A stretch of DNA of 58,429 nt, filler included, from Platydemus manokwari (taxonomy: Eukaryota), in assembly GCA_037951405.1 (NCBI GenBank). It is 6 parts of 6 records of this genome, joined end to end, with 100 filler letters (N's around TTAATTAATTAA, not from the genome) between each part and the next. Parts side by side here need not be neighbours in the genome. Positions count along the whole stretch, not along the records: positions 18,005 to 29,310 come from JBBMOY010776646.1; 5 more parts are not named here. One strand, given 5' to 3'. The translations under genes were made by a program, and so were the position numbers. The notes below the pieces were generated by a model. It made no database searches and had not been told where the DNA came from. It saw nothing but the letters and a program-made list of their open reading frames with translations. This document shows positions 18,005 through 29,310 of this stretch, piece after piece (the stretch's first letter is position 1; the number at the start of each line of letters is the position of its first letter).

Positions 18005-18419
18005 GGATAATCCATAAAGTATTTTTAATTATAATGCATATCATTTAACATATAAATATCGCTTTATTTTTATGGATATTGATGTTTGAAAATGTCATTA
18101 CTGTTACTGTAAAGGGTCATGATAATTTATGTTGGATAATAAAATCGAAGAATCATTGCATTCACAATAGAAGCTGGAAATGATATTTGTTTTCAATGAT
18201 AAATTAACTATCAAATCATATTTTTATGGCACTTGGACGATTGACAGGTTATTGCCAATAAAAGTAACAAAAAACTATGAAAAATTTGCTTTCTCGACAA
18301 TGAAATACAAAACAGGTTTATTAAAAACAAACAGACCCATAATCTTTATACAACTGGTTTGATACATTGGAGATTTGGATTCTTTGTTCTGAATAGTTCA
18401 TTAGTTTAATACTTAAACG

Positions 18420-21400
18420 ATGGTTGGACTCACTGATATGATATACCGATGCTACTGATTCAACCATGAATCTGTTCTGTGACAGTGATATGTTGGATAA
18501 ATTTGAGGAAATAAAAATATTCCTTCATACCTATGATCAATATCCTTTTTTCGACGATATGTGGTATTGATATATACGATGTCGATCTATCTAGTGGGAT
18601 TGAAAGTGATTCTATGGTTGCCAATACTTCTACTAGAATTCATATTGACTTGGTTTCTGATTGTGATGACTCTTTTACATCATCCCAGTGTATTTTGGAT
18701 TCACAAGAAATAAATGACTAAAAACTATTTTGTGATACTAGAACCTCTGATTCAGTTCCAGTTTTTAATATTATTATTGATCTTACAACTAAAGAAAATA
18801 CCATCGATCTTTTGATCTTCAAAGCGTGCTTGGATTCTAATGTTTGGTTTACTTTTTGTACAGTCAAAAAGTCTTTTTCATTACCGTGTAACATTAATGT
18901 TGCACGAATTAAGAAACATTCTGCCTCCTTATATAAGATTACCGATATTTCTAATAGTGGAATTGAGTGCTATGGTGGGTTTGTTGGTAACGCTGTTGAC
19001 TTTAAATCGCATTATCTTTCGCATAGTATTAGTTCGAAAACTAATACTGAGTCTGTCTTTAGATGATGAAACTTTGGTAAGGTTGCCTTTAGGGGAAGAT
19101 CTTACTTCGGAATGCCTAAGCGGGTCGGAAATAGAATGGTTTATTTGCCTTAGATTGTTAGGTAACTGTTGAATTATTTTTAAACCCCAACAACCTGCTT
19201 TTCCCATTTCTCGTCTTAAAACGGTTTTATTTTATGACAAATCCCCGTTTCGGAACATAAGAACTTCCAATATAGTTCTTTGCCTTATTCATTGAAATAA
19301 CGATCATTGGCTTGTTTGTATTGTACATATAAGCGAGAAAAGTCTTATTTGTTTGAGCAGGCGAAACGTGAGGTTACTGATGAACAAATCATTTTATGAA
19401 TAAAACTCAATTGGCTATTGGAGAATTTATTCGCACGAAGACTTTTCTTTTCGTTTACTTAGTCTTATATTGAGAATTTCCCACTTCAACTTCCTTCAAT
19501 TGACTGTGGTCTCTTTGTGTTAGGGTATATATTAGATAATTGTTATAATATAAGTTTCGCTTCTCCAGTTTCGGATCTTAGAACTCAGGTTAATAAATGT
19601 CTGAGAGAGTTTATTGATGGGAAACTAGGTCTTGAAATGACTAAAATAAAGACTTGACCAAGGTTTTGAACTATTGGCATAAGCCAGTGATGGTCTTACT
19701 ACGTGATAGGTTTAAGATGAAATTTAAGTATCTTTTTGATGTAGAGAAAGAGCACGTTTAGTCGATATTTGAACTTCGGAAAGCATGCAGTATTATGCCT
19801 AAGAAAGTGGTGTAACGCATTCTTTCATCATTGTCTCCCACTTCTTTGCATACTATAGAGGAAATTACGAAACATTACACATATAAGTCTCCACTACCTT
19901 CTACTGGCTTGAATATAGATCTTCCATATTCTGAAAACAACTTCACAAATGACTCTATTTCTATTGAAGAGATTGCTAATACCCTTAAAAATGCAAGTAA
20001 TTCTGCTTCATGACATTATAGTCTTTTGTTCGTTGATTGATGTGAGATAGACCCAAGTTTCGTGTTTCTTCGCAAACTATTTAATCTTATTATATTGAAA
20101 GGGCGTGTACCCTATCAGTGCAAGAAGTTTAATACTAATCTTATTCTAAAACCACTGAAAGATAATCAAACATATCTTGTGTCATTTTGACGATCAATTG
20201 CGCTGATGGACACGTCCTATAGAATCTTCTTTACGATTCTAAATAATAGAATTTTTCTTTAAATAACTTGTGGAAAATTTTTATCAAAGAATCAATGGCA
20301 CTTCAATAAGAGGATGGTTGTACTGAACGTAATGCTTGTTTGCAGTCGAGTAGCAAATCTTGTAAAATAAGTAGGGTAAATTGTCTTTTTGTATAGTTGG
20401 ATTTGAGGGATGCTTCCCCTAGTTTGTCTCGTGAATTTCTCTGGTTAACTTTAGAAAAGATAGGTTGTGCTTCTGGCACAATTAACTTACTCAAATTTTT
20501 TATGAGAATGTTTCAACAACCTATCACTATGGTGGAATGGTAACTCCTTTAAGTGAGATAGTTAAAGATGTTGCCTTTATCCTTTATCCATGACTATAAT
20601 TTTTGGCAATTGACTTCCTATTTAAATGTTGTGGTAATCTTTAACGTCCTTTCATATTGGGAGGCATGGAATTCTTCATATTAGCCTATGCTGACTTAGT
20701 CGTTATTTCTTCAGATGCAGCTGGGATCGCTAATAGATTAGATAGAATTGTGGAATTAGCTTCAAAGGTTCACTTGACTTTCAACACTAGTAAGTGTGGT
20801 TATTATTGTAACAATTCTGAATTGAGGACTGAGTTGAAGATATATGACACTGCAGTTCCGATAGTAGATTGTGATAATTAATACAAATATCTTGGAGTTC
20901 CTTTTGGTTTCCATAAGAGTAAAGTTATTGGTGATATTTTAAATAATATCATCTTTGACTTAGAAATGATTTGTAACACGAAATTAGATCCGATTCAAAA
21001 ACTAAATGCCTTTAAAGTGTTTTTACATTTCATCTTTGAAATAGGGAAATCAGTATTTTATATCTTTCTCCTCACAAGAGGAAAATGGGTGATCAACCCA
21101 GGGAACCTGGATTCCATGAAAAGATACGCCAACTCATTAAAAAGGCAATTGGTGTTGACTTTTTTTAGGTGACGAATTATGATTTCATCTCTACTTGTAG
21201 GATATAAAGTGGTTTGAGCATTATTTAGGGAGAAATTGGCTATTATATATAGGTTATTGTTGGATCTTTCCAGCTTTGGAGTAGTGCTGATTCTAATTTG
21301 CAGGTTTTGTAAAAATAGGTTGATTGCAGTTGTAAGCAGAACATTTTCCAAGTCTGAAGAGATTCAGTTAGAGAGGTCTCTTGCTTAACTAAATAATTGT

Positions 21401-23240
21401 ATAAATGATGAGCATCTCAGTACAGGTTCGAGTGGGGATACTGGCTCTGCAAAGTAAAGGGATTGATTGTAAGTTTGTCTAGGTTGATGGTGAGTTGTAT
21501 TTGAAAATTGTTTGTAGGGAGTCGCAATATATGATTGGAAAAAAGGAGAAAAATAAGGTTTGCTCAATAATACATGAAGCTTTTTGTCTTATATGCTATG
21601 AATCTTGGTGTACTAAAAAGTCTCAGGGATTGTTGACAGCGACTTCAAAATTTGCAGTTGATATATTGGACTCTATTGTTTTGGCTCCTCAGGTTTGGCA
21701 CTTCTTGGGGCTAGGTAGGAACAATTTGCTTCTACTTAACCATACGGTGTTCCGTGGCCTAATATGTATGAGTTGTGGTGTGTCAGTAGAATCGATGGCT
21801 AATCATTGAATTCTTATCTATTTTAATCTGTTTTATTATACAAAATATTAATTAAAATCAATATATGATTTTTGTATGTGAAGGAATTGATTGGATATTC
21901 TGAAAAAATTTAAATGTTTTGTTGATTATTTTAAGAAATAGAAAAAATTATTTTATATATCACAAAATTATGATTTTTAAAACCTCGGTGATTCTGTTGA
22001 ACTTGTAACTATTCGATATATTTTGGTTGGCAGCCCGTATAGTGGAACGACAAAGTATAAACGAGTATTACTGGGGTTTTCGAATAGACTTATCTCATAG
22101 GGTTACAATGCTGACACTGACTGTCCGCCAACTAAAGTGAAGACACTGTTAAGACCGGATCTGATAATTATAAATAAGACGAATAGAATTTAGAACACTT
22201 CCCCTGTTGACTTTTTTTATTTGATTCCGTTGAGAATTTCAAGAAAAACTTGGAGAGTAATCATAGAAAGTACGATCGATTGCTTGTTCAGATTGCTAGG
22301 AAATTTAGGCATTCTGTTAGTGTTTATGTTATAAATATTGGTTGTTTTGGATCTTGAGATCCTCAAAATGATAGTGTACTTAAGCGTAAAGGACTGGATA
22401 AAAAATAAACCTCAGATTTGACTTCACTTCTGATAAGTTCTTCAATTAAAGAGTTACAAAAACTTTATCGTACACGCATGGCAAAGAAACTTAGGTCTCC
22501 AATTTTTTGTAAATATGCTTATTTGTTTATTATTGTTCATTCTGCGTTTGTGTTTATAAAGTTTATAAAGAAACATTTTGTTTACTACAACTTTTTATTG
22601 TTGTATGTGTTTTATAAGGTGCAAACTGAGAATCAGTACAGTCTTCTCCACCTTTTTATCCAATTGTATCAATGTGTTCTTAGCAAGTGTGTTTATCTTG
22701 GTTCAAAAATCAATTCTCGTGGTGGATTGAGTCCACCTGTAAAAAAGCTTATACTATGCGATCAGTCGAGAATTGTCTTGGGTGAAACTTAGTTATTATA
22801 CAATTTTTTGACACTTTATGAAACAATACTGAGTTTTAGAATGAGAAAATTAGAGAAATTTTATTATGCTAAGAAAATTATTGAACCTTCAACGGTTCTT
22901 ATCAGGTGATTCGCCTTTTCGAATTGAGCTTATTTTGCCGACTTTGTGATCTAGAACGAAAGTCTGCATGACGCGGTCCGTCGGGTTTCTCTCGGGGTTT
23001 CAGACTATTTAATGAACGAAATACTTGTAATCTTTGGTTCAGGCAGTTGAGGTTTACAGAATTTGACTTGAAAACTATCCAGGTCTCGAGGATTTGATAC
23101 TCTGATGTTTCAAGCAATTGGACGTTCTTAAGTTATGCTGCGGGATGAGCGGCGACTTAACTTTGTTTTGTTGTAAACCTTTTTCATTTGAATGCTGCAT
23201 ATACATATATGAGCGTGCTTTTCCAATAAATTATGTTGGT
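18420..23240 (+). mobile_element. Decayed NeSL/R5-type non-LTR retrotransposon (Ulp1 protease - RT - CCHC - restriction-like endonuclease)
   Basis: Ulp1/C48: IVLCLIH*NNDHWLVCIV (His at 19305) and FPLQLPSIDCGLFVL (Cys at 19505). RT: ISIEEI..L..ASNSA, GRVP..CKK, *RSIALMDTSYRIF, DGCTE, *LDLRDA, ILAYAD-L, FNTSKC, YKYLGVPFG, LDPIQKL. Zn knuckle CMSC..ESMANH. RLE: LRPDLII (22149), KYD, IGCFGS*DP.N. AATAAA near 23225. Many stops and frameshifts; ends approximate. Confidence 0.85.
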
Positions 23241-24473
23241 AATTTTCCTCAAACAATTTCGTCAATATTCGTCGACAAAACACTCATTGACTTTAGTTAA
23301 AGGTATTTTCTTAATACATAAATAAATTCAAACGAAAATGTATTACATACAGTAATCTTTTCGAATCAATTGTGTTTTAAGAAATGGGTGATCGAAATGA
23401 TTACAGTATAATATATTAATAACTCATAAATATTGTCCATCACGAAACAATAAACAAAACTATGAGGTGATTTGTCATTGACTGACTTTCCTCATGAAAT
23501 CTTTAATAATTGTAATAATTTGAAATTATGTTTTCATTTTAAAGTTAAAAAATAATTTTATTTTTCATCTGGTATTTCTACAAATTATTGAAATCAGTGA
23601 ACGCTTATGATCAATCGGGTCTATATTTTTTAATGATATCATCTAGAAGAATTTCTTGTTCACCTGCTTAAAATTTTTTAATAAATTCATTCACTGCAAG
23701 AACTCTATTACAAAAATAGCACGAAATGGAAATGTCCTCGATATAAAAATAAAAAGGCAAAACATGTACTTGTTAAATATCATAAATAATTTCATGAATC
23801 GTGTTGGAATTTGCTTTTCAATCTGATCAGTGAAGATCTCCTTCGTTTGAATATCATTACGATGTCCAGTAATTTACTGATTGGCATGAATTGGTTTAAA
23901 ATAATTTTATCCAAGGTTAATAAAAAATTATAAGAACTTGGAAAAATTATTATTTCCGAATATTAAACAATGGGATATCGTTACGCTAATTTGTGAAGAT
24001 ATTATATTTTTTCAATGGACATTTAAGGATTAATATATTGGTAACCTACCAGGATTAATTGATGAAAATATCAATTAGAGAATATTAGAGAATATAATAA
24101 TTTATTAAATTAATAATGAGGATCCATAATGACAACCTTTAAAATATATGAAAAATATTCTATTTTAGAATGATGGAACTGACAACAAGCTCTCATTAAA
24201 TAGTTAATATAAATAATAAATGTACGATATATACGGAATCGAGTTTGTGATATCGAAATGATTTTAGAAGAAGTAAAGATTTATTCATATTCAAAACATT
24301 GGTAAAAATATTTTTGAAAAAATCATTCAATTGCAGTGTTGAATGATGCGATATTGTTACTGTTGAGAATGAGTTTTGGCACAAATTATTTCAATTCTTA
24401 GTGTGAATAATGTATTTAAAAGAGTCAGAGAAACAATTGTGCATTTTTAATAGTGCAGATTGTTTCCTTAATT

Positions 24474-25433
24474 TTAGAACTTTTGAAATACTCTTGATGT
24501 TATTGATTTAATGATATACTTCCAGAAATTTCGAAAATTTGGAAATATTATCAAATAAGCGATTGGGTGAATAGCTGTCAGGCATCCAACAGAGAAATCA
24601 TTATAATAAAAGTAACAATTCGTTATTTCCGATGCTAAAAGATTCATAGAATACATTGAAAATAATAATGAATTGAAGAACAGAATGATGGCATAACTTG
24701 AATTGGAAACGATGTTGGCTAAGGTGAATCGGGTTAATATTTTCTTCCGACTGTTATTGATGTTTTGATTATTAATATTAGCTTTGCTTTTTATGCTCAG
24801 ATACAGAAAATAACCAGAGACACAATTTAAAATTACGACAATCACTAATGGACCAATGTTACTAAATAATGTATACATTTGCGTGTAAATTATTGATTTC
24901 TTAAATTCACAAGAATAATTATTTTGATGTATTTCACTTGAAATATTTGAGTATCTTGTGGTAATCGTAATAAAGAATAGACTTCCACATTCTAAGGTAC
25001 ATGCTGTCAAAATTACCGAAATTACGTAGAAATATACTTCAAACGATTTTCTATGTTTGTAATACATAGGAAACACAATGCATATCGATCGATCGATTGT
25101 CAATGAAACCATCAAAAATATACCAATGTTTATTAGAATCCAATAAACAGGTTTGATATATAAAATATAACAATAAAATTGAACATAAATCGAATTTTTC
25201 GAAAGAAAATAAGTCGGTTCCTGTATCGGTTCAGTGCACAATAATAGCAGAGCAATCACATCGAAAATCGTTTCAAATTTTATGAGAATTGTTGCCGTTC
25301 TTGAGGCAATTTTGTGTTTAAAAATGAATATCAACAGCATTATATTCAATAAAAGAAAAACAGAAATAAAAATATATCGAACAGTTACAAATCCAATATA
25401 ATCACCAACATTTGTATTGATTAGAAAAATCAT
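24474..25433 (-). CDS. Intronless orphan rhodopsin-like (class A) GPCR, 319 aa
   Basis: Seven hydrophobic segments, Cys at the top of TM3 and in ECL2, TIDRSICIVFP (DRY variant), TM7 IHPIAY followed by FPNFRNF (helix 8). Confidence 0.85.
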   Translation of the reverse strand: MIFLINTNVGDYIGFVTVRYIFISVFLLLNIMLLIFIFKHKIASRTATILIKFETIFDVIALLLLCTEPIQEPTYFLSKNSIYVQFYCYILYIKPVYWILINIGIFLMVSLTIDRSICIVFPMYYKHRKSFEVYFYVISVILTACTLECGSLFFITITTRYSNISSEIHQNNYSCEFKKSIIYTQMYTLFSNIGPLVIVVILNCVSGYFLYLSIKSKANINNQNINNSRKKILTRFTLANIVSNSSYAIILFFNSLLFSMYSMNLLASEITNCYFYYNDFSVGCLTAIHPIAYLIIFPNFRNFWKYIIKSITSRVFQKF

Positions 25434-26654
25434 AGTTATAAGATAAAATAAAATAATTTTTTACTATTTCTTATAATAATCAAAAAAACATTTAATTTGC
25501 TCTTCAGAATATCCAATCAACTCCTTTACATACAAAAATCATATTTTGATTTTGATTCATATTTTGTATAATAAGATATATTAAAATAGATAAGAATTTT
25601 ATAAATTAAATTGAGATCTGGGTTGTCACAAACGGAATCTTTATAAAATTTCTAATATTAATATCCATCATATTCAAAGACGTGAAAATTCTCAAATCAT
25701 ATTTTTACAAGTAAATCAATTTAGGGTGATGAAACATACGGCTTATTTTATTTATTTTATTTTCAAAACATACAAGCTTTCTTTATGTTCCAAAAATTTT
25801 CAATAAAACAGTAGAAATGCTACTGATTTGGCAGTGGAATCTTCTTTTAGTTTGATTCGATATAGACTTCTAATTGGGTAATGAAATAAAACAAAGCTTA
25901 ATATACATTATAGTCAAGTTTAAATTACCGACTTTTGGACCCTAACCTTGTCATAGGAAATATAAATATTTAAAATTTAGAAACAGTACCTAGCCAATTC
26001 GAATGTCTCATGTGTCCTTGTGATTAAAAATAAAGAGTTATTGAGATTTACAAGTTACTAAGGGTATATCAAGCTGTTAATACAAATTGATGAGTTCAAT
26101 GTGTTGGACTTTTATGTCATCAATTTGGCATACTTCTGCATATCTAGCGTTTGGCATGAAATGTTCCCATTTGAAGACTTGAATTTGACAAGATTTCTTG
26201 TTGAAATTCAGTTTAATTCAAAAAATTAATGCTCTTCACATTCTATAGTCGACAATGACGACACTGGTCATTGGAAATATGCCAAGATATTTTGCTGAAA
26301 ATATTTTTGAAGAGACTCTTCTTTCAAATGATAAATCAGCTCGATTCGTGACTGGGTGATATCATATGGATAGGTATTTTTTATCAATCATAGATTTCTG
26401 AAGAATCTAGTATAGAGAGATAGTAGGGTCATGGTGCATGAATAAAATTATGCTCCTCGATGTATTATGAATTGAGGGAATCATGTAATAATTGATAACT
26501 TTGCTTAGGCGGAATTGTTTTATATATTTTTATTTCAAATTATATATAGCTTTGTTTTTATCAGTAAAAAAATATCTAAAGATCAAGGTTCAAATTTTCT
26601 AAGCAGATCTTTTTTAGATAAATTTTAGATAATATTAACAAGACTGGAAAGTTC

Positions 26655-26758
26655 AAGATTTAAACTTAAATAAATCGATTAAAATTGGTTAAATGATTTA
26701 GTCTCAAAGATTTAAATTTAAATAAATCGATTAGAGTTGGTTATATGATTTAGCCTGA
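26655..26758 (+). repeat. Tandem 52-bp duplication immediately upstream of the mariner ATG
   Basis: AAGATTTAAA(C/T)TTAAATAAATCGATTA(A/G)A(A/G)TTGGTTA(A/T)ATGATTTAG occurs twice, starting at 26655 and 26707. Confidence 0.9.
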
Positions 26759-26761
26759 AAG

Positions 26762-27700
26762 ATGAAGGCAAAGCAACCCGACATAAATTTCTTCGTTGCA
26801 ACTTTAACACGAAACAACTTTTCGGCTACCGAAATCCATTGCTTTCTTGTTGAAAGTTGGGGAGCAAAAAAAGTCGGTAAACTTCGAAGAGTACAGCAGA
26901 TTGCCAAAGAGTTTTCAGGAGAACAGCAAACACTTTTTGAGCGAAAAGAAGGTTCAGGAAAACTAAGAGCGAGCACTGCAGAAAAAATGTCATTATTGTA
27001 TGTACAATGATCGACGAAGATTGCCAATTAAGCTGTCCAACCATTTCAAGAATCACTGACATTAAAGGAACGAATATTAGTCGCATATTGAAACAAGAAC
27101 TTGAAAAGAAGTCATTTTGCAGCAGATAGGTTCCTCACATTGTGACGGATAATAAGAAGAATCAGAGTTACTTGCTGTCAAGAAATGTTGAATGTTTATT
27201 TTGCAAGAAAGGCTAAAGGAAATATCATTGTGATCGGTGAAAATGAATTTGATTTTGAGGCGTACCCCCAAAGGAATAAAACCGTGTTTGGATGAATGGA
27301 ATTGGTGATCGCCAACTATTGCTAGGCGGACAATATCTGATAACAAAGTTCTGATTATTGTTACCGGCAAATATGCAAAATCATTTCGAAATTCTTCATG
27401 AGGGTAGATCCTTCAACGCTGAGAGATGCCTATAATTTCTTTAGAATATGATTTTAAAATTTCACACAAAAATACCTGTTTGGAAAATGGTCATTCAGCA
27501 TGACAATTTCAGACCTCATGCAGCACAGTTAATTCAACTTTGGCTTGAAGAACATCGCATCTCTCTATTAAAGAAACCGGCCTACTCACCTGACACAAGC
27601 CTCATGGATCACTTTATCTTCAGGAACTACGAGTGCTAGTGACGTGGAAAATATTTCAGGAGAAGTGAGCAACCAATTTCACCAATATTTGGAGTCAACA
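26762..27700 (+). mobile_element. mariner (DD34D) transposase pseudogene
   Basis: N-terminal HTH-like SATEIHCFLVESWG; SR*VPHIVT (WVPHEL motif, TAG at 27127); IVIGE; QHDNFRPH and PAYSPDTSLMD with 34 residues between the last two catalytic Asp. Stops and frameshifts; TIRs not found. Confidence 0.9.
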
Positions 27701-29310
27701 TCGGAGGCCAAGCTCACACTTTTGGTATAATTACACATGTGATTTCTACAAATAAATGTTTTAAATTGGTTTCGTTTTAATTTTGATGAGATTTCATCGA
27801 CGTAGAAAAACAAAATTTGTCTGTGTTTTTTTCACTGTTTTCTTTAATTTTCACTATGTCTGATAGTCTTCTCTCACGCTGATCTTCCCAAAACCTCAGA
27901 TTTAGTAATATTCCTATTAAGGTGGACATTTTTTAAACTTCTCTTGAACAGATTTTAATAGGTAGAAAATTTTTGCACAAAATTTGATAATTGCAAATTT
28001 AATTTTCTGCAATGTTAATAATTGATATCAATAATTTAAATTCTTTAAATGTGATAATTTTGGTAATCAGTTCCTATATTAAATGCTGCTGTGTAATGAA
28101 ATACAATCTGAGATACAGTATTATTTTAATTCCCAATGTTGGTACAAATAATTTATAATCCTCTTATAATTCTAAATGCTCTAAAATCATCACTTTATTA
28201 ATCCACATTTTAATTACAATGATTCAAACAAATTATTCTTTTTATAAAAATGCTTTTTGAAAATTTGCAAATTACAATTCATTATAAATCCCCACTGTTA
28301 AAAATTCAAAGTCTTGTTTTGCGAAAAATAAAAATTCAGATATTTCGAATTTGCAATGAAAAAATACACGATTTGGCGTATTTATTTACTTTACTAGCTT
28401 GATTAGTTTTTGATAGCTGTAAATCTTAATTTAACTAAAAAATACCATGTAAATTTGTTTTATCATATTGATACCAATTAAAGTATTTTATGTTGCCTAA
28501 ATCAAATGACGTCAAAACAAATCATCATTTACTTATGATGAACTCATATTGTAGCTCTATTTATCGAATTATTGGTGTATATATTTGACAAAATTTGCAA
28601 TTCCACGAATTTTCGGAATAGTTTTGAATAAAAATAAATGATTTATTTAAATAAAATACTTGATAGGTTTGAAGTAATGTATTTATGAGGACTTTATTAA
28701 ATTATCATTTGTAAAATCTGCTGTGTCTAGCTGATGTAGTATCAAGGAAGACAACTGCTGAAGGCCAACGAAACAAATCAATTAAAAATGAGGTGAGGGA
28801 TATGCCACCGCCTCGAAACGAAAATTTTGTGTTGAAATAAAATTTAGCATTTTTTTTGCAATAACACTTATTTGTTTGACTCCAAAATAAAATAAGTTTT
28901 TTCACTGGGATATATCACAATGTACGACATCTAGCACACTAAGGCCCAGTACATAATTAAATTAGATTAACACAAAAAGCAAAACAAGCCTGCAAACAAT
29001 TTTGAGATACTAGCCGAGTATTTGATTCTATTCTAATTAATATCTTCGTAAATATTTTTACAATCTTTTTATCAACAATTGAAATTAATAGTATCTGTAA
29101 TAACTATCACGAATAGTTTTAACAGAAATAGTCACCTGGTCCTAGTTCAATGAAAGTTTCGTCTTGTGTCTAGCTCACTAAGATTCTGATTTTAATTCAT
29201 TAAGTTTCTGACTAACTCTAGTATTGTTTCTCAATGACAGTCTTAAACATAATGTCATCATACATATTTAATTTTAAATTACATTACTGTGCTGTAAACA
29301 ATACAAGCAA

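What the first reader, a model, noticed from the sequence alone, without database searches (positions are those of the whole stretch)
18533..19530. Tandem SIM-like motifs upstream of a Ulp1 SUMO-protease domain in an RLE retrotransposon
Seen: one reading frame (a single TAA at 18719) encodes an acidic, Ser-rich region with four hydrophobic-DL motifs: YDVDLSS (~18575), IHIDLVSDCDD (18638), IIIDLTT (18770) and TIDL (18800). After a frameshift comes a Ulp1/C48 domain (His 19305; Gln/Cys in PLQ...DCG, Cys 19505), then RT and RLE. Established: (V/I)DL(T/S) cores with acidic flanks are SUMO-interacting motifs, arrays of them give poly-SUMO binding (RNF4; SENP6/7-type chain editors), and NeSL-clade elements can carry Ulp1 domains. 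Inference: the ancestral element encoded a poly-SUMO-targeting deSUMOylase fused to its RT, possibly to counter SUMO-dependent TE silencing or to remodel chromatin at the insertion site. I am not aware of the SIM array being described for these elements.
Basis: partly seen in the sequence, partly recalled or inferred. Interest (0 to 1): 0.78.

Follow-up and report, generated by a model that had tools for sequence, protein, structure and literature searches.

The report
SUMO-binding-like motifs before transposon protease
A decayed copy of a multi-copy retrotransposon carries four closely spaced (I/V)-D-L motifs in an acidic, serine-rich leader just upstream of its SUMO-protease-like domain; they are clearly not chance and look like SUMO-binding motifs, but SUMO binding could not be tested here.

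Summary
In one frame (a single TAA in 182 codons) lie YDVDLSS, IHIDLVSDCDD, IIIDLTT and TIDL, at the stated coordinates. The region has 20% D+E and 25% S+T.

Four [IV]DL within 80 residues is not chance. No dinucleotide shuffle of the piece (0 of 300) and no residue shuffle of the region (0 of 20,000) reaches it. Generic SIM cores, however, are not enriched beyond the region's composition (3 seen, 1.2 expected, P=0.13).

Downstream are broken Ulp1/C48 remnants. His, Gln and Cys have Ulp1-like spacing, and the Cys-box piece matches PF02902 clusters in the ESM Atlas. A broken RT follows. The RLE is absent: the copy is cut inside the CCHC motif at 21806.

Contigs of a public run show a multi-copy family whose homology begins near 18553. 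No widely shared change appears in motifs 1-2 beyond I>V and C>S. Other copies link the leader, Ulp1 and RT.

No relatives of the leader were found in any searchable collection, so conservation across families and SUMO binding remain untested. Best reading (about 45%): a SIM array guiding the fused SUMO protease. Rivals: another peptide motif or a folded beta-structure, or a DNA-level repeat (T[TC]GATCT[TA], 4 of 4 occurrences here).

The parts
18553..21806 (+). Decayed, 3'-cut copy of a multi-copy non-LTR retrotransposon (leader - Cys/His region - Ulp1-like - RT - start of CCHC)
   Evidence: Contigs of run X1 at 80% likeness or more: 134 laid. Depth is source-only in 18440-18552 and rises from 18553. 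Frame reading.
18533..18718 (+). First open piece of the former ORF (ATG at 18533), acidic and Ser-rich, holding motifs 1 and 2
18575..18595 (+). Motif 1, YDVDLSS, followed by GIESDS. It has only 2 aliphatic residues in any 4-residue window, so it is a weak SIM candidate. It resembles the PIAS2 peptide VDVIDLTIESS.
   Evidence: PMC9071424.
18638..18670 (+). Motif 2, IHIDLVSDCDD: core IDLV plus an acidic/Ser tail. Of the changes shown (best-supported rows only), five contigs have I>V at the first residue and six have C>S.
18719..18721 (+). The single in-frame stop (TAA) of the leader
18770..18790 (+). Motif 3, IIIDLTT: core IIDL plus TT, the best match to PIAS/RNF4-type SIM cores
   Evidence: PMC3901395.
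18800..18820 (+). Motif 4, TIDLLIF: core IDLL with no acidic tail. It lies next to a small GATCTT tandem duplication.
18830..19034 (+). Cys/His-containing stretch ending in H-x3-H. Possibly a decayed zinc finger; not established.
   Evidence: by eye. No Pfam hit. Structure model of low confidence.
19035..19654 (+). Ulp1/C48-like remnant, broken by stops and frame changes (frame 0, then frame 2)
   Evidence: ESM Atlas for 19463-19654: 26 of 30 hits are PF02902, score 0.95, 203 shared features. Piecewise Pfam and PDB searches were blank.
19305..19307 (+). Putative catalytic His (NNDHW)
   Evidence: The bin holding it is a peak of depth among copies.
19487..19507 (+). Gln (19487) to Cys (19505) in PLQLPSIDCG. 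Gln-Cys is 6 residues and His-Cys about 67 residues, as in Ulp1/SENP (spacing recalled from memory).
19990..21170 (+). Reverse transcriptase, broken (frames 1, 0, 2). Contains an LDLRDA block and a YAD-box block.
   Evidence: RVT_1 E=0.11 on one 78-aa piece. Three of this copy's stops here are sense codons in most other copies.
21765..21806 (+). Start of the post-RT Cys/His motif (C-x2-C-x9-H). The element is cut here.

Best explanation
The stretch is the 5' part of a dead, 3'-cut copy of a multi-copy non-LTR retrotransposon. Its single ORF once read: acidic Ser/Thr-rich leader, then a Cys/His region, then a Ulp1/C48 cysteine-protease domain, then RT, then CCHC (and presumably RLE). The leader carries four [IV]DL motifs in about 80 residues. 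The most likely function of these motifs in the active ancestor is as SUMO-interacting motifs. Each would add a beta-strand to the SIM groove of SUMO, helped by acidic and CK2-type phosphorylatable flanks. Together they would give avidity for multiply or poly-SUMOylated proteins and so steer the fused SUMO-protease domain to them, as in Ulp2, SENP6 and SENP7.

Shown here: the motifs, their non-random clustering, the coding character of the frame, the adjacency to a C48-like domain, and membership of the same repeat family. Inferred: SUMO binding, protease activity on SUMO, and any role in transposition or in countering host silencing.
For: - The motifs and their frame are verified.
- The cluster of 4 [IV]DL is reached in 0 of 300 dinucleotide shuffles and 0 of 20,000 composition-preserving residue shuffles.
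- The frame has 1 stop in 182 codons where about 12.6 are expected.
- The region has D+E 20% and S+T 25%.
- Motif 2 uses different codons (ATT GAC TTG) from the others. This argues for selection on the peptide.
- In 5-7 other contigs covering 18625-18662, the only widely shared differences listed are one synonymous change, I>V and C>S. The last gives VSDSDD.
- Contig records link leader-RT, ZF-Ulp1 and Ulp1-RT in other copies.
- The Cys-box piece matches Peptidase_C48 clusters. His, Gln and Cys have Ulp1-like spacing.
- Literature: the SIM definition and phospho-flanks (PMC12751080); VIDLT as the optimal PIAS core (PMC3901395); multiple SIMs in Ulp2/SENP6/SENP7 extensions (PMC12687455); Ulp1 domains in NeSL and Utopia-1_TSP (PMC4640811).
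Against: - Generic SIM cores are not enriched over the region's composition (3 observed, 1.2 expected, P=0.13).
- Motif 1 has only two aliphatic residues in any 4-residue window.
- Motifs 3 and 4 lack acidic tails. They could be the two strands of a hairpin (NIIIDLT-TKEN-TIDLLIFK). The low-confidence model puts strands there.
- A DNA octamer, T[TC]GATCT[TA], occurs 4 times in the piece, all within 18582-18820, and one of them is out of frame.
- Few other contigs cover motifs 3-4 (depth 19-47), so their conservation is not shown.
- No relatives of the leader were found anywhere.
- In this copy the leader and the His-box of Ulp1 are in different frames, so continuity of the ancestral ORF is inferred.
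- The catalytic Asp is not identifiable.
Confidence: 0.45

Rival explanations
1. The [IV]DL motifs are real, selected peptide features but not SIMs. They could be another short linear motif for an unknown host partner. Alternatively, for motifs 3-4, they could be beta-strands of a small folded N-terminal domain that precedes the Cys/His region.
For: What is statistically enriched is the tripeptide [IV]DL, not the SIM consensus. Motifs 3 and 4 are 9 residues apart with a TKEN turn-like linker. The AlphaFold model places strands on both, at low confidence.
Against: The model has pLDDT 45.6 from a single sequence and so carries little weight. Motifs 1-2 lie in a very acidic, Ser-rich stretch typical of disordered regions. 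The fused domain is a SUMO-protease homologue, and [VI]DL[TS] is the core of the best-known SIMs (PMC3901395). The CtBP (PxDLS) and HP1 (PxVxL) patterns recalled from memory do not fit, because there is no Pro.
Confidence: 0.3
2. The repeat is selected at the DNA or RNA level. Under this reading T[TC]GATCT[TA] is a cis-acting element at the 5' end of the element, such as an internal promoter or a protein-binding site, and the peptides are a by-product.
For: All 4 occurrences of T[TC]GATCT[TA] in the 11.3-kb piece lie within 18582-18820. One, at 18812, is out of frame with the others.
Against: Motif 2 encodes IDL with different codons and is not matched by the octamer. The out-of-frame copy looks like a local tandem duplication, GATCTT(TT)GATCTT. 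The frame is open over 182 codons. The RNA fold is no better than shuffles (z=+0.57). No Rfam family, ribozymes included, was found.
Confidence: 0.12
3. The leader (18553-18811) belongs to a different repeat or insertion that merely abuts the Ulp1-RT element in this copy.
For: Depth of other contigs is higher on 18553-18778 than on 18779-19230. One contig joins 18752 to 19807, skipping the ZF and Ulp1 parts.
Against: That same contig continues collinearly into the RT (19985-20257 and 20666-20826). So the leader is linked to the element body, on the same strand and in the same order, in a second copy. What lies between its two sides is 'not known' and may be diverged rather than absent. The open frame runs on from the leader into the Cys/His region.
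Confidence: 0.05
4. The cluster is a chance product of AT-rich, decayed sequence.
For: The copy is heavily decayed. I, D and L codons are common in AT-rich DNA.
Against: 0 of 300 and 0 of 20,000 shuffles reach the observed cluster. Other copies share the sequence of motifs 1-2.
Confidence: 0.04

Closest known systems
NeSL-1 (Caenorhabditis) and Utopia-1_TSP (Trichinella spiralis), RLE-type non-LTR retrotransposons with an N-terminal Ulp1-like protease (PMC4640811)
   Same: A single ORF with N-terminal Cys/His motif(s), a Ulp1-like cysteine protease upstream of the RT, and a Cys/His motif after the RT. No APE domain lies before the RT.
   Different: No RLE is present in this copy, which is cut at 21806. 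RT phylogeny was not testable. No snRNA, SL or rRNA target was found at the flank. An array of SIM-like motifs is not mentioned for those elements in the paper I could read. The host is not identified and may not be a nematode.
Ulp2 / SENP6 / SENP7, SUMO-chain-editing C48 proteases with several SIMs in disordered extensions (PMC12687455)
   Same: The architecture: a cluster of SIM-like motifs in an acidic, Ser-rich extension next to a C48 catalytic domain.
   Different: There is no detectable sequence homology of the leader to any protein. Here the protease is fused to a reverse transcriptase. Binding and chain preference are untested.
RNF4 and PIAS SIMs (IVDLT/VVDLT recalled from memory; VIDLT core and PIAS2 467-VDVIDLTIESS-477 from PMC3901395 and PMC9071424)
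   Same: IIIDLTT and IHIDLVSD(C/S)DD share the psi-psi-D-L-(T/V/S) core with an acidic or Ser tail. Motif 1 with its tail (DVDLSSGIESDS) resembles VDVIDLTIESS. There are four motifs within about 80 residues, as in multi-SIM readers.
   Different: This is motif-level resemblance only. Motif 1 lacks a third aliphatic residue. Spacings of 21, 44 and 9 residues are longer and more uneven than the compact RNF4 SIM cluster (that comparison is from memory).
Ulp1 domains in DNA transposons (Ginger1, Mutator-like elements; PMC2836005)
   Same: A TE-borne C48 domain of unknown role.
   Different: Those are DNA transposons with a C-terminal Ulp1 domain. No SIM array is reported there.

Membership tests
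Peptidase C48 (Ulp1/SENP) | Catalytic His, Gln (oxyanion) and Cys in conserved blocks with the family's spacing | tested here: met
   NNDHW (His 19305) and PLQLPSIDCG (Gln 19487, Cys 19505). Gln-Cys is 6 residues and His-Cys about 67 residues. The reference spacing of Ulp1/SENP1 is recalled from memory.
Peptidase C48 (Ulp1/SENP) | Catalytic Asp about 17 residues after His | tested here: inconclusive
   A frame change falls in this stretch. The position reads Ser in one frame and Glu in the other.
Peptidase C48 (Ulp1/SENP) | Significant match to the family profile (PF02902) or to a solved C48 structure | tested here: inconclusive
   Pfam on stop-free pieces of 35-64 aa gave no hit. PDB phmmer on two pieces gave no C48 hit. 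ESM Atlas features of the 64-aa Cys-box piece gave 26 of 30 hits to PF02902 clusters, score 0.95, 203 shared features, recognition 2482.
NeSL/Utopia-type RLE non-LTR retrotransposon | Reverse transcriptase domain | tested here: met
   RT blocks can be read in three frames. RVT_1 gave only E=0.11 on one 78-aa piece. At three stops of this copy, most other copies have sense codons.
NeSL/Utopia-type RLE non-LTR retrotransposon | C-terminal CCHC motif followed by a restriction-like (PD-(D/E)xK) endonuclease | tested here: not met
   Only C-x2-C-x9-H at 21765-21806 is present. From 21809 the sequence is an inverted duplicate of 25369-25598. This copy is cut, so the family's state is unknown.
NeSL/Utopia-type RLE non-LTR retrotransposon | RT groups with NeSL/Utopia in a phylogeny | not testable with these tools
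   No reference RT sequences of eukaryotic elements could be obtained. Word, HMMER and locus searches found no relatives.
NeSL/Utopia-type RLE non-LTR retrotransposon | Insertion in a specific repetitive target (spliced-leader or U2 snRNA gene) | tested here: not met
   Rfam at E up to 1 finds no RNA gene next to 18553 or anywhere near the element. The 3' junction is lost.
SUMO-interacting motif (SIM) | Four-residue core with at least three V/I/L (PMC12751080) | tested here: met
   IDLV, IIDL and IDLL qualify, that is motifs 2, 3 and 4. Motif 1 (VDLS) does not. Such cores are not enriched over composition (P=0.13).
SUMO-interacting motif (SIM) | Acidic or phosphorylatable stretch flanking the core | tested here: met
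   SSGIESDS follows motif 1. SDCDD follows motif 2 and is SDSDD in six other contigs. TT follows motif 3. Motif 4 has none.
SUMO-interacting motif (SIM) | Located in an accessible, disordered region | tested here: inconclusive
   The composition is typical of disorder. The single-sequence model of 18722-19063 has pLDDT 45.6 with strands on motifs 3-4.
SUMO-interacting motif (SIM) | Binds SUMO | not testable with these tools
No job was sent.

The most novel reading that the evidence does not exclude
Active members of this family encode a SIM-guided, poly-SUMO-directed deSUMOylase fused to their reverse transcriptase. It strips SUMO from chromatin or silencing factors at the element or at its insertion site. 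That would make it a transposon-borne counter-measure to SUMO-dependent silencing, or an aid to target-primed integration.
Probability: 0.15. Interest if true: 0.8.

Novelty: new variant of a known kind. Interest (0 to 1): 0.45.

Why it matters
Ulp1/C48 domains recur in unrelated transposons: NeSL, Utopia, Ginger1 and Mutator-like elements. Their role has stayed speculative (PMC2836005, PMC4640811). A SIM array next to such a domain would be sequence-level evidence that the domain acts on SUMO conjugates rather than processing the element's own polyprotein. It would also suggest a preference for multiply or poly-SUMOylated targets. That gives a concrete, cheap test: peptide or leader binding to SUMO chains, and Cys-dependent chain cleavage. 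Because SUMO is tied to heterochromatin and transposon silencing in animals (my own knowledge, not tested here), it would point to a possible anti-silencing function. Three full-text searches found no paper describing SIMs in transposon-borne Ulp1 proteins. The searchable library is incomplete.

Tried and rejected
**Relatives of the leader**
- Word search with 18722-19063 and with 18515-18718: blank.
- Full HMMER scan of 1.84 billion representatives with 18722-19063: 3 hits, all spurious matches to unrelated repeat proteins.
- ESM Atlas with the same piece: no usable hit.
- Metagenome scans with two RT pieces, and a viral-contig scan with the leader: no confirmed relative.

These blanks say little, because the collections may not hold this organism's transposon ORFs. 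The word search also cannot see long ORFs.

- Conservation therefore rests on the summary tables of one read-laying run. The run used may be the source of this DNA.

**Ulp1 identity**
- Pfam on ten stop-free pieces: no C48 hit.
- PDB phmmer on the His-box and Cys-box pieces: no C48 hit. The pieces are too short.

**Other checks**
- Structure of 18722-19063: pLDDT 45.6, no conclusion.
- RNA fold of 18545-18830: z=+0.57.
- Rfam: no ribozyme or target RNA gene.
- Complex prediction: not used, because no SUMO sequence can be supplied under its rules.
- The third word search was left unused, because no stop-free query is long enough to reach full-length relatives.

**Rejected on pattern (recalled from memory)**
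- CtBP PxDLS and HP1 PxVxL motifs: no Pro.
- Ulp1 cleavage sites: no Gly-Gly.
Full report
**What is there**

The piece (18005-29310) is 30% G+C. On the + strand from about 18530 to 21806 lies a heavily decayed protein-coding region, readable only by changing frames.

In the frame with position mod 3 = 2, the stretch 18515-19063 has one stop (TAA, 18719) in 182 codons. The piece's six-frame stop frequency of 6.9% predicts about 12.6. The 79 residues that span them have D+E 20%, S+T 25% and K+R 5%. The six-frame background is 6%, 14% and 12%.

**Is it more than chance?**

[IV]DL occurs 11 times in all six frames of the piece (about 22,600 codons). Four of these lie within 77 codons of one frame here. 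None of 300 dinucleotide-preserving shuffles of the piece gives four within 80 residues; one gives three. None of 20,000 shuffles of the region's own residues gives four [IV]DL, with a mean of 0.21. The tripeptide cluster is therefore real.

One qualification matters. Generic SIM cores (three of four positions V/I/L, with an acidic or hydroxyl residue at the odd position) are seen 3 times against 1.2 expected from composition (P=0.13). The statistics support 'a repeated I/V-D-L motif', not 'SIMs' as such.

**Downstream domains**

After a Cys/His-containing stretch ending in H-x3-H (about 18830-19034; no Pfam hit), the reading passes to frame 0 (LSGSEIEWFI..., then NNDHWLVCIVHI with His at 19305). 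It then returns to frame 2 (PLQLPSIDCGLFVLGY, Gln 19487, Cys 19505), with several stops on the way.

Gln-Cys is 6 residues and His-Cys about 67. As far as I recall, this is the spacing in yeast Ulp1 and the SENPs. The Asp position falls at a frame change and cannot be called.

Piecewise Pfam and PDB searches found no C48 match, because the pieces are only 35-64 residues. The ESM Atlas feature search with the 64-residue Cys-box piece gave 26 of 30 hits to clusters carrying PF02902 Peptidase_C48 (score 0.95, 203 shared features, recognition 2482). I accept the C48 assignment as probable.

The RT follows at about 19990-21170 in frames 1, 0 and 2. It shows recognisable blocks (LDLRDA..., a YAD-box block) and a weak RVT_1 match (E=0.11).

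About 200 residues after the RT comes C-x2-C-x9-H (21765-21806). There the element ends. From 21809 the sequence is an inverted duplicate (83% over 230 nt) of 25369-25598, which is the upstream region and first 24 codons of an intact 319-codon ORF on the minus strand.

So this copy has no restriction-like endonuclease. The 'RLE' in the finding's title is an expectation from the architecture (no APE domain before the RT, a Cys/His motif after it), not an observation.

**Other copies**

One public run (coded X1, contigs only) holds the stretch at 100%. It may be the source of this DNA and is therefore not independent. Its other contigs are informative.
- 134 contigs lie on 18440-21806 at 80% likeness or more, and 133 of them are below 95%. 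This is a multi-copy, diverged family.
- Depth is source-only in 18440-18552 and rises to 70 in 18553-18665. Family homology therefore starts at about 18553, some 20 nt after the ATG at 18533 and just before motif 1.
- At 18625-18662, five to seven other contigs are laid. Only the best-supported 40 of 272 difference rows are shown. Among them, the differences from this copy in the leader are one synonymous change, I>V at the first residue of motif 2, and C>S in its tail, giving VSDSDD. No widely shared change therefore appears in the VDL or IDL codons of motifs 1-2.
- Motifs 3-4 lie where depth is only 19-47, so little can be said about them.
- Three contigs that run on past 18682 keep an open frame with a similar I-I-D-S-Q-E stretch (loose ends).
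- Contig records link parts of the element in other copies. Record 2 links the Ulp1 His-box to the RT, record 3 links the Cys/His region to Ulp1, and record 4 links the leader to the pre-RT region and the RT. What lies between the two sides in record 4 is not known. This argues against the leader being a separate insertion.
- Three of this copy's in-frame stops in the RT are sense codons in most other copies. Less decayed copies probably exist.

**Relatives elsewhere**

None could be retrieved. Two word searches were blank. The full HMMER scan of 1.84 billion representatives gave only three spurious repeat-protein hits. The Atlas gave no usable hit. Two metagenome scans and one viral scan found nothing confirmed.

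Conservation of the motifs in other Ulp1-bearing families, the test that would matter most, was therefore not possible.

**How it most likely works**

The published SIM definition is a four-residue core with at least three hydrophobic residues (V, L, I), flanked by acidic or phosphorylatable residues (PMC12751080).
- Motif 2: IDLV plus SD(C/S)DD. Fits well.
- Motif 3: IIDL plus TT. Fits well.
- Motif 4: IDLL, no acidic tail. Fits the core only.
- Motif 1: VDLS plus SGIESDS. Lacks a third aliphatic residue, but with its tail it resembles the PIAS2 SIM peptide VDVIDLTIESS (PMC9071424).

VIDLT is described as the core of one of the tightest SIMs (PMC3901395). Multiple SIMs in the disordered extensions of Ulp2, SENP6 and SENP7 are implicated in recognising poly-SUMOylated substrates (PMC12687455). 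An array of such motifs directly upstream of a C48 domain is therefore most simply read as a targeting module for a SUMO protease. I put this at about 45%.

I put it at about 15%.

**Rivals**

(a) Another peptide function, or beta-strands of a folded domain. Motifs 3 and 4 are separated by TKEN and could form a hairpin. The single-sequence AlphaFold model places strands there but at pLDDT 45.6, which decides nothing.

(b) A DNA-level repeat. T[TC]GATCT[TA] occurs four times in the piece, all between 18582 and 18820. Three are the VDL/IDL codons of motifs 1, 3 and 4. One, at 18812, is out of frame and looks like a small tandem duplication. Several points speak for the peptide level instead. Motif 2 encodes IDL with other codons. 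The frame is open. The RNA does not fold better than shuffles (z=+0.57). Rfam finds nothing.

(c) A separate insertion, or (d) chance. Both are unlikely for the reasons given above.

**Comparison with what is known**

Ulp1-like proteases upstream of the RT are known in nematode NeSL families and in Utopia-1_TSP (PMC4640811). Ulp1 domains also occur in Ginger1 and Mutator-like DNA transposons, with only speculative roles (PMC2836005). This element shares the NeSL/Utopia architecture, but clade membership is untested. There is no RLE in this copy, no phylogeny was possible, and no RNA-gene target lies at the flank.

I found no paper describing SIMs in transposon-borne Ulp1 proteins. The library is incomplete.

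**Verdict**

I rate it a new variant of a known kind, of moderate interest.

The copies were only described.

Noticed in passing
window 24474-25433 (-): An intact 319-codon ORF with an ATG start. By eye it is a multi-pass membrane protein with a DRS-like and an NPxxY-like stretch, so possibly a lineage-specific rhodopsin-type receptor. It has no Pfam hit at E up to 0.1.
   Followed up: partly
window 21809-22024 (+) and 25369-25598 (-): An inverted duplication (83% over 230 nt; 92% over the best 96 nt) of the upstream region plus the first 24 codons of the 319-codon ORF. It starts exactly where the retrotransposon copy is cut, so a rearrangement probably removed the element's 3' end, including any RLE.
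   Followed up: partly
window 27448-27636 (+): A 63-codon open stretch matching DDE_3 (DDE superfamily endonuclease), E=3.4e-05 and below Pfam's cutoff. Probably a remnant of a Tc1/mariner-type DNA transposon.
   Followed up: no
window 18582-18820 (+): The DNA octamer T[TC]GATCT[TA] occurs four times in the 11.3-kb piece, all here. Three coincide with the VDL/IDL codons and one is out of frame.
   Followed up: partly
window 19915-19923 (+): A fifth in-frame IDL (GLNIDLPYSENN) in the linker between Ulp1 and RT. Three other contigs differ at the Ile codon only synonymously. It has only two aliphatic residues in the core.
   Followed up: partly
window 20040, 20190, 20879 (+): Three of this copy's in-frame stops in the RT are sense codons in most other contigs of the family. 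Less decayed copies probably exist in the same genome.
   Followed up: partly
window 26655-26763: A 52-nt unit repeated 2.1 times in tandem (89% matches).
   Followed up: no
window 18816-19169 (+), frame 0: A second long open stretch (118 codons) overlaps the open frame-2 stretch 18722-19063. The third frame has 32 stops over the same region, so codon-position composition is strongly periodic there.
   Followed up: no
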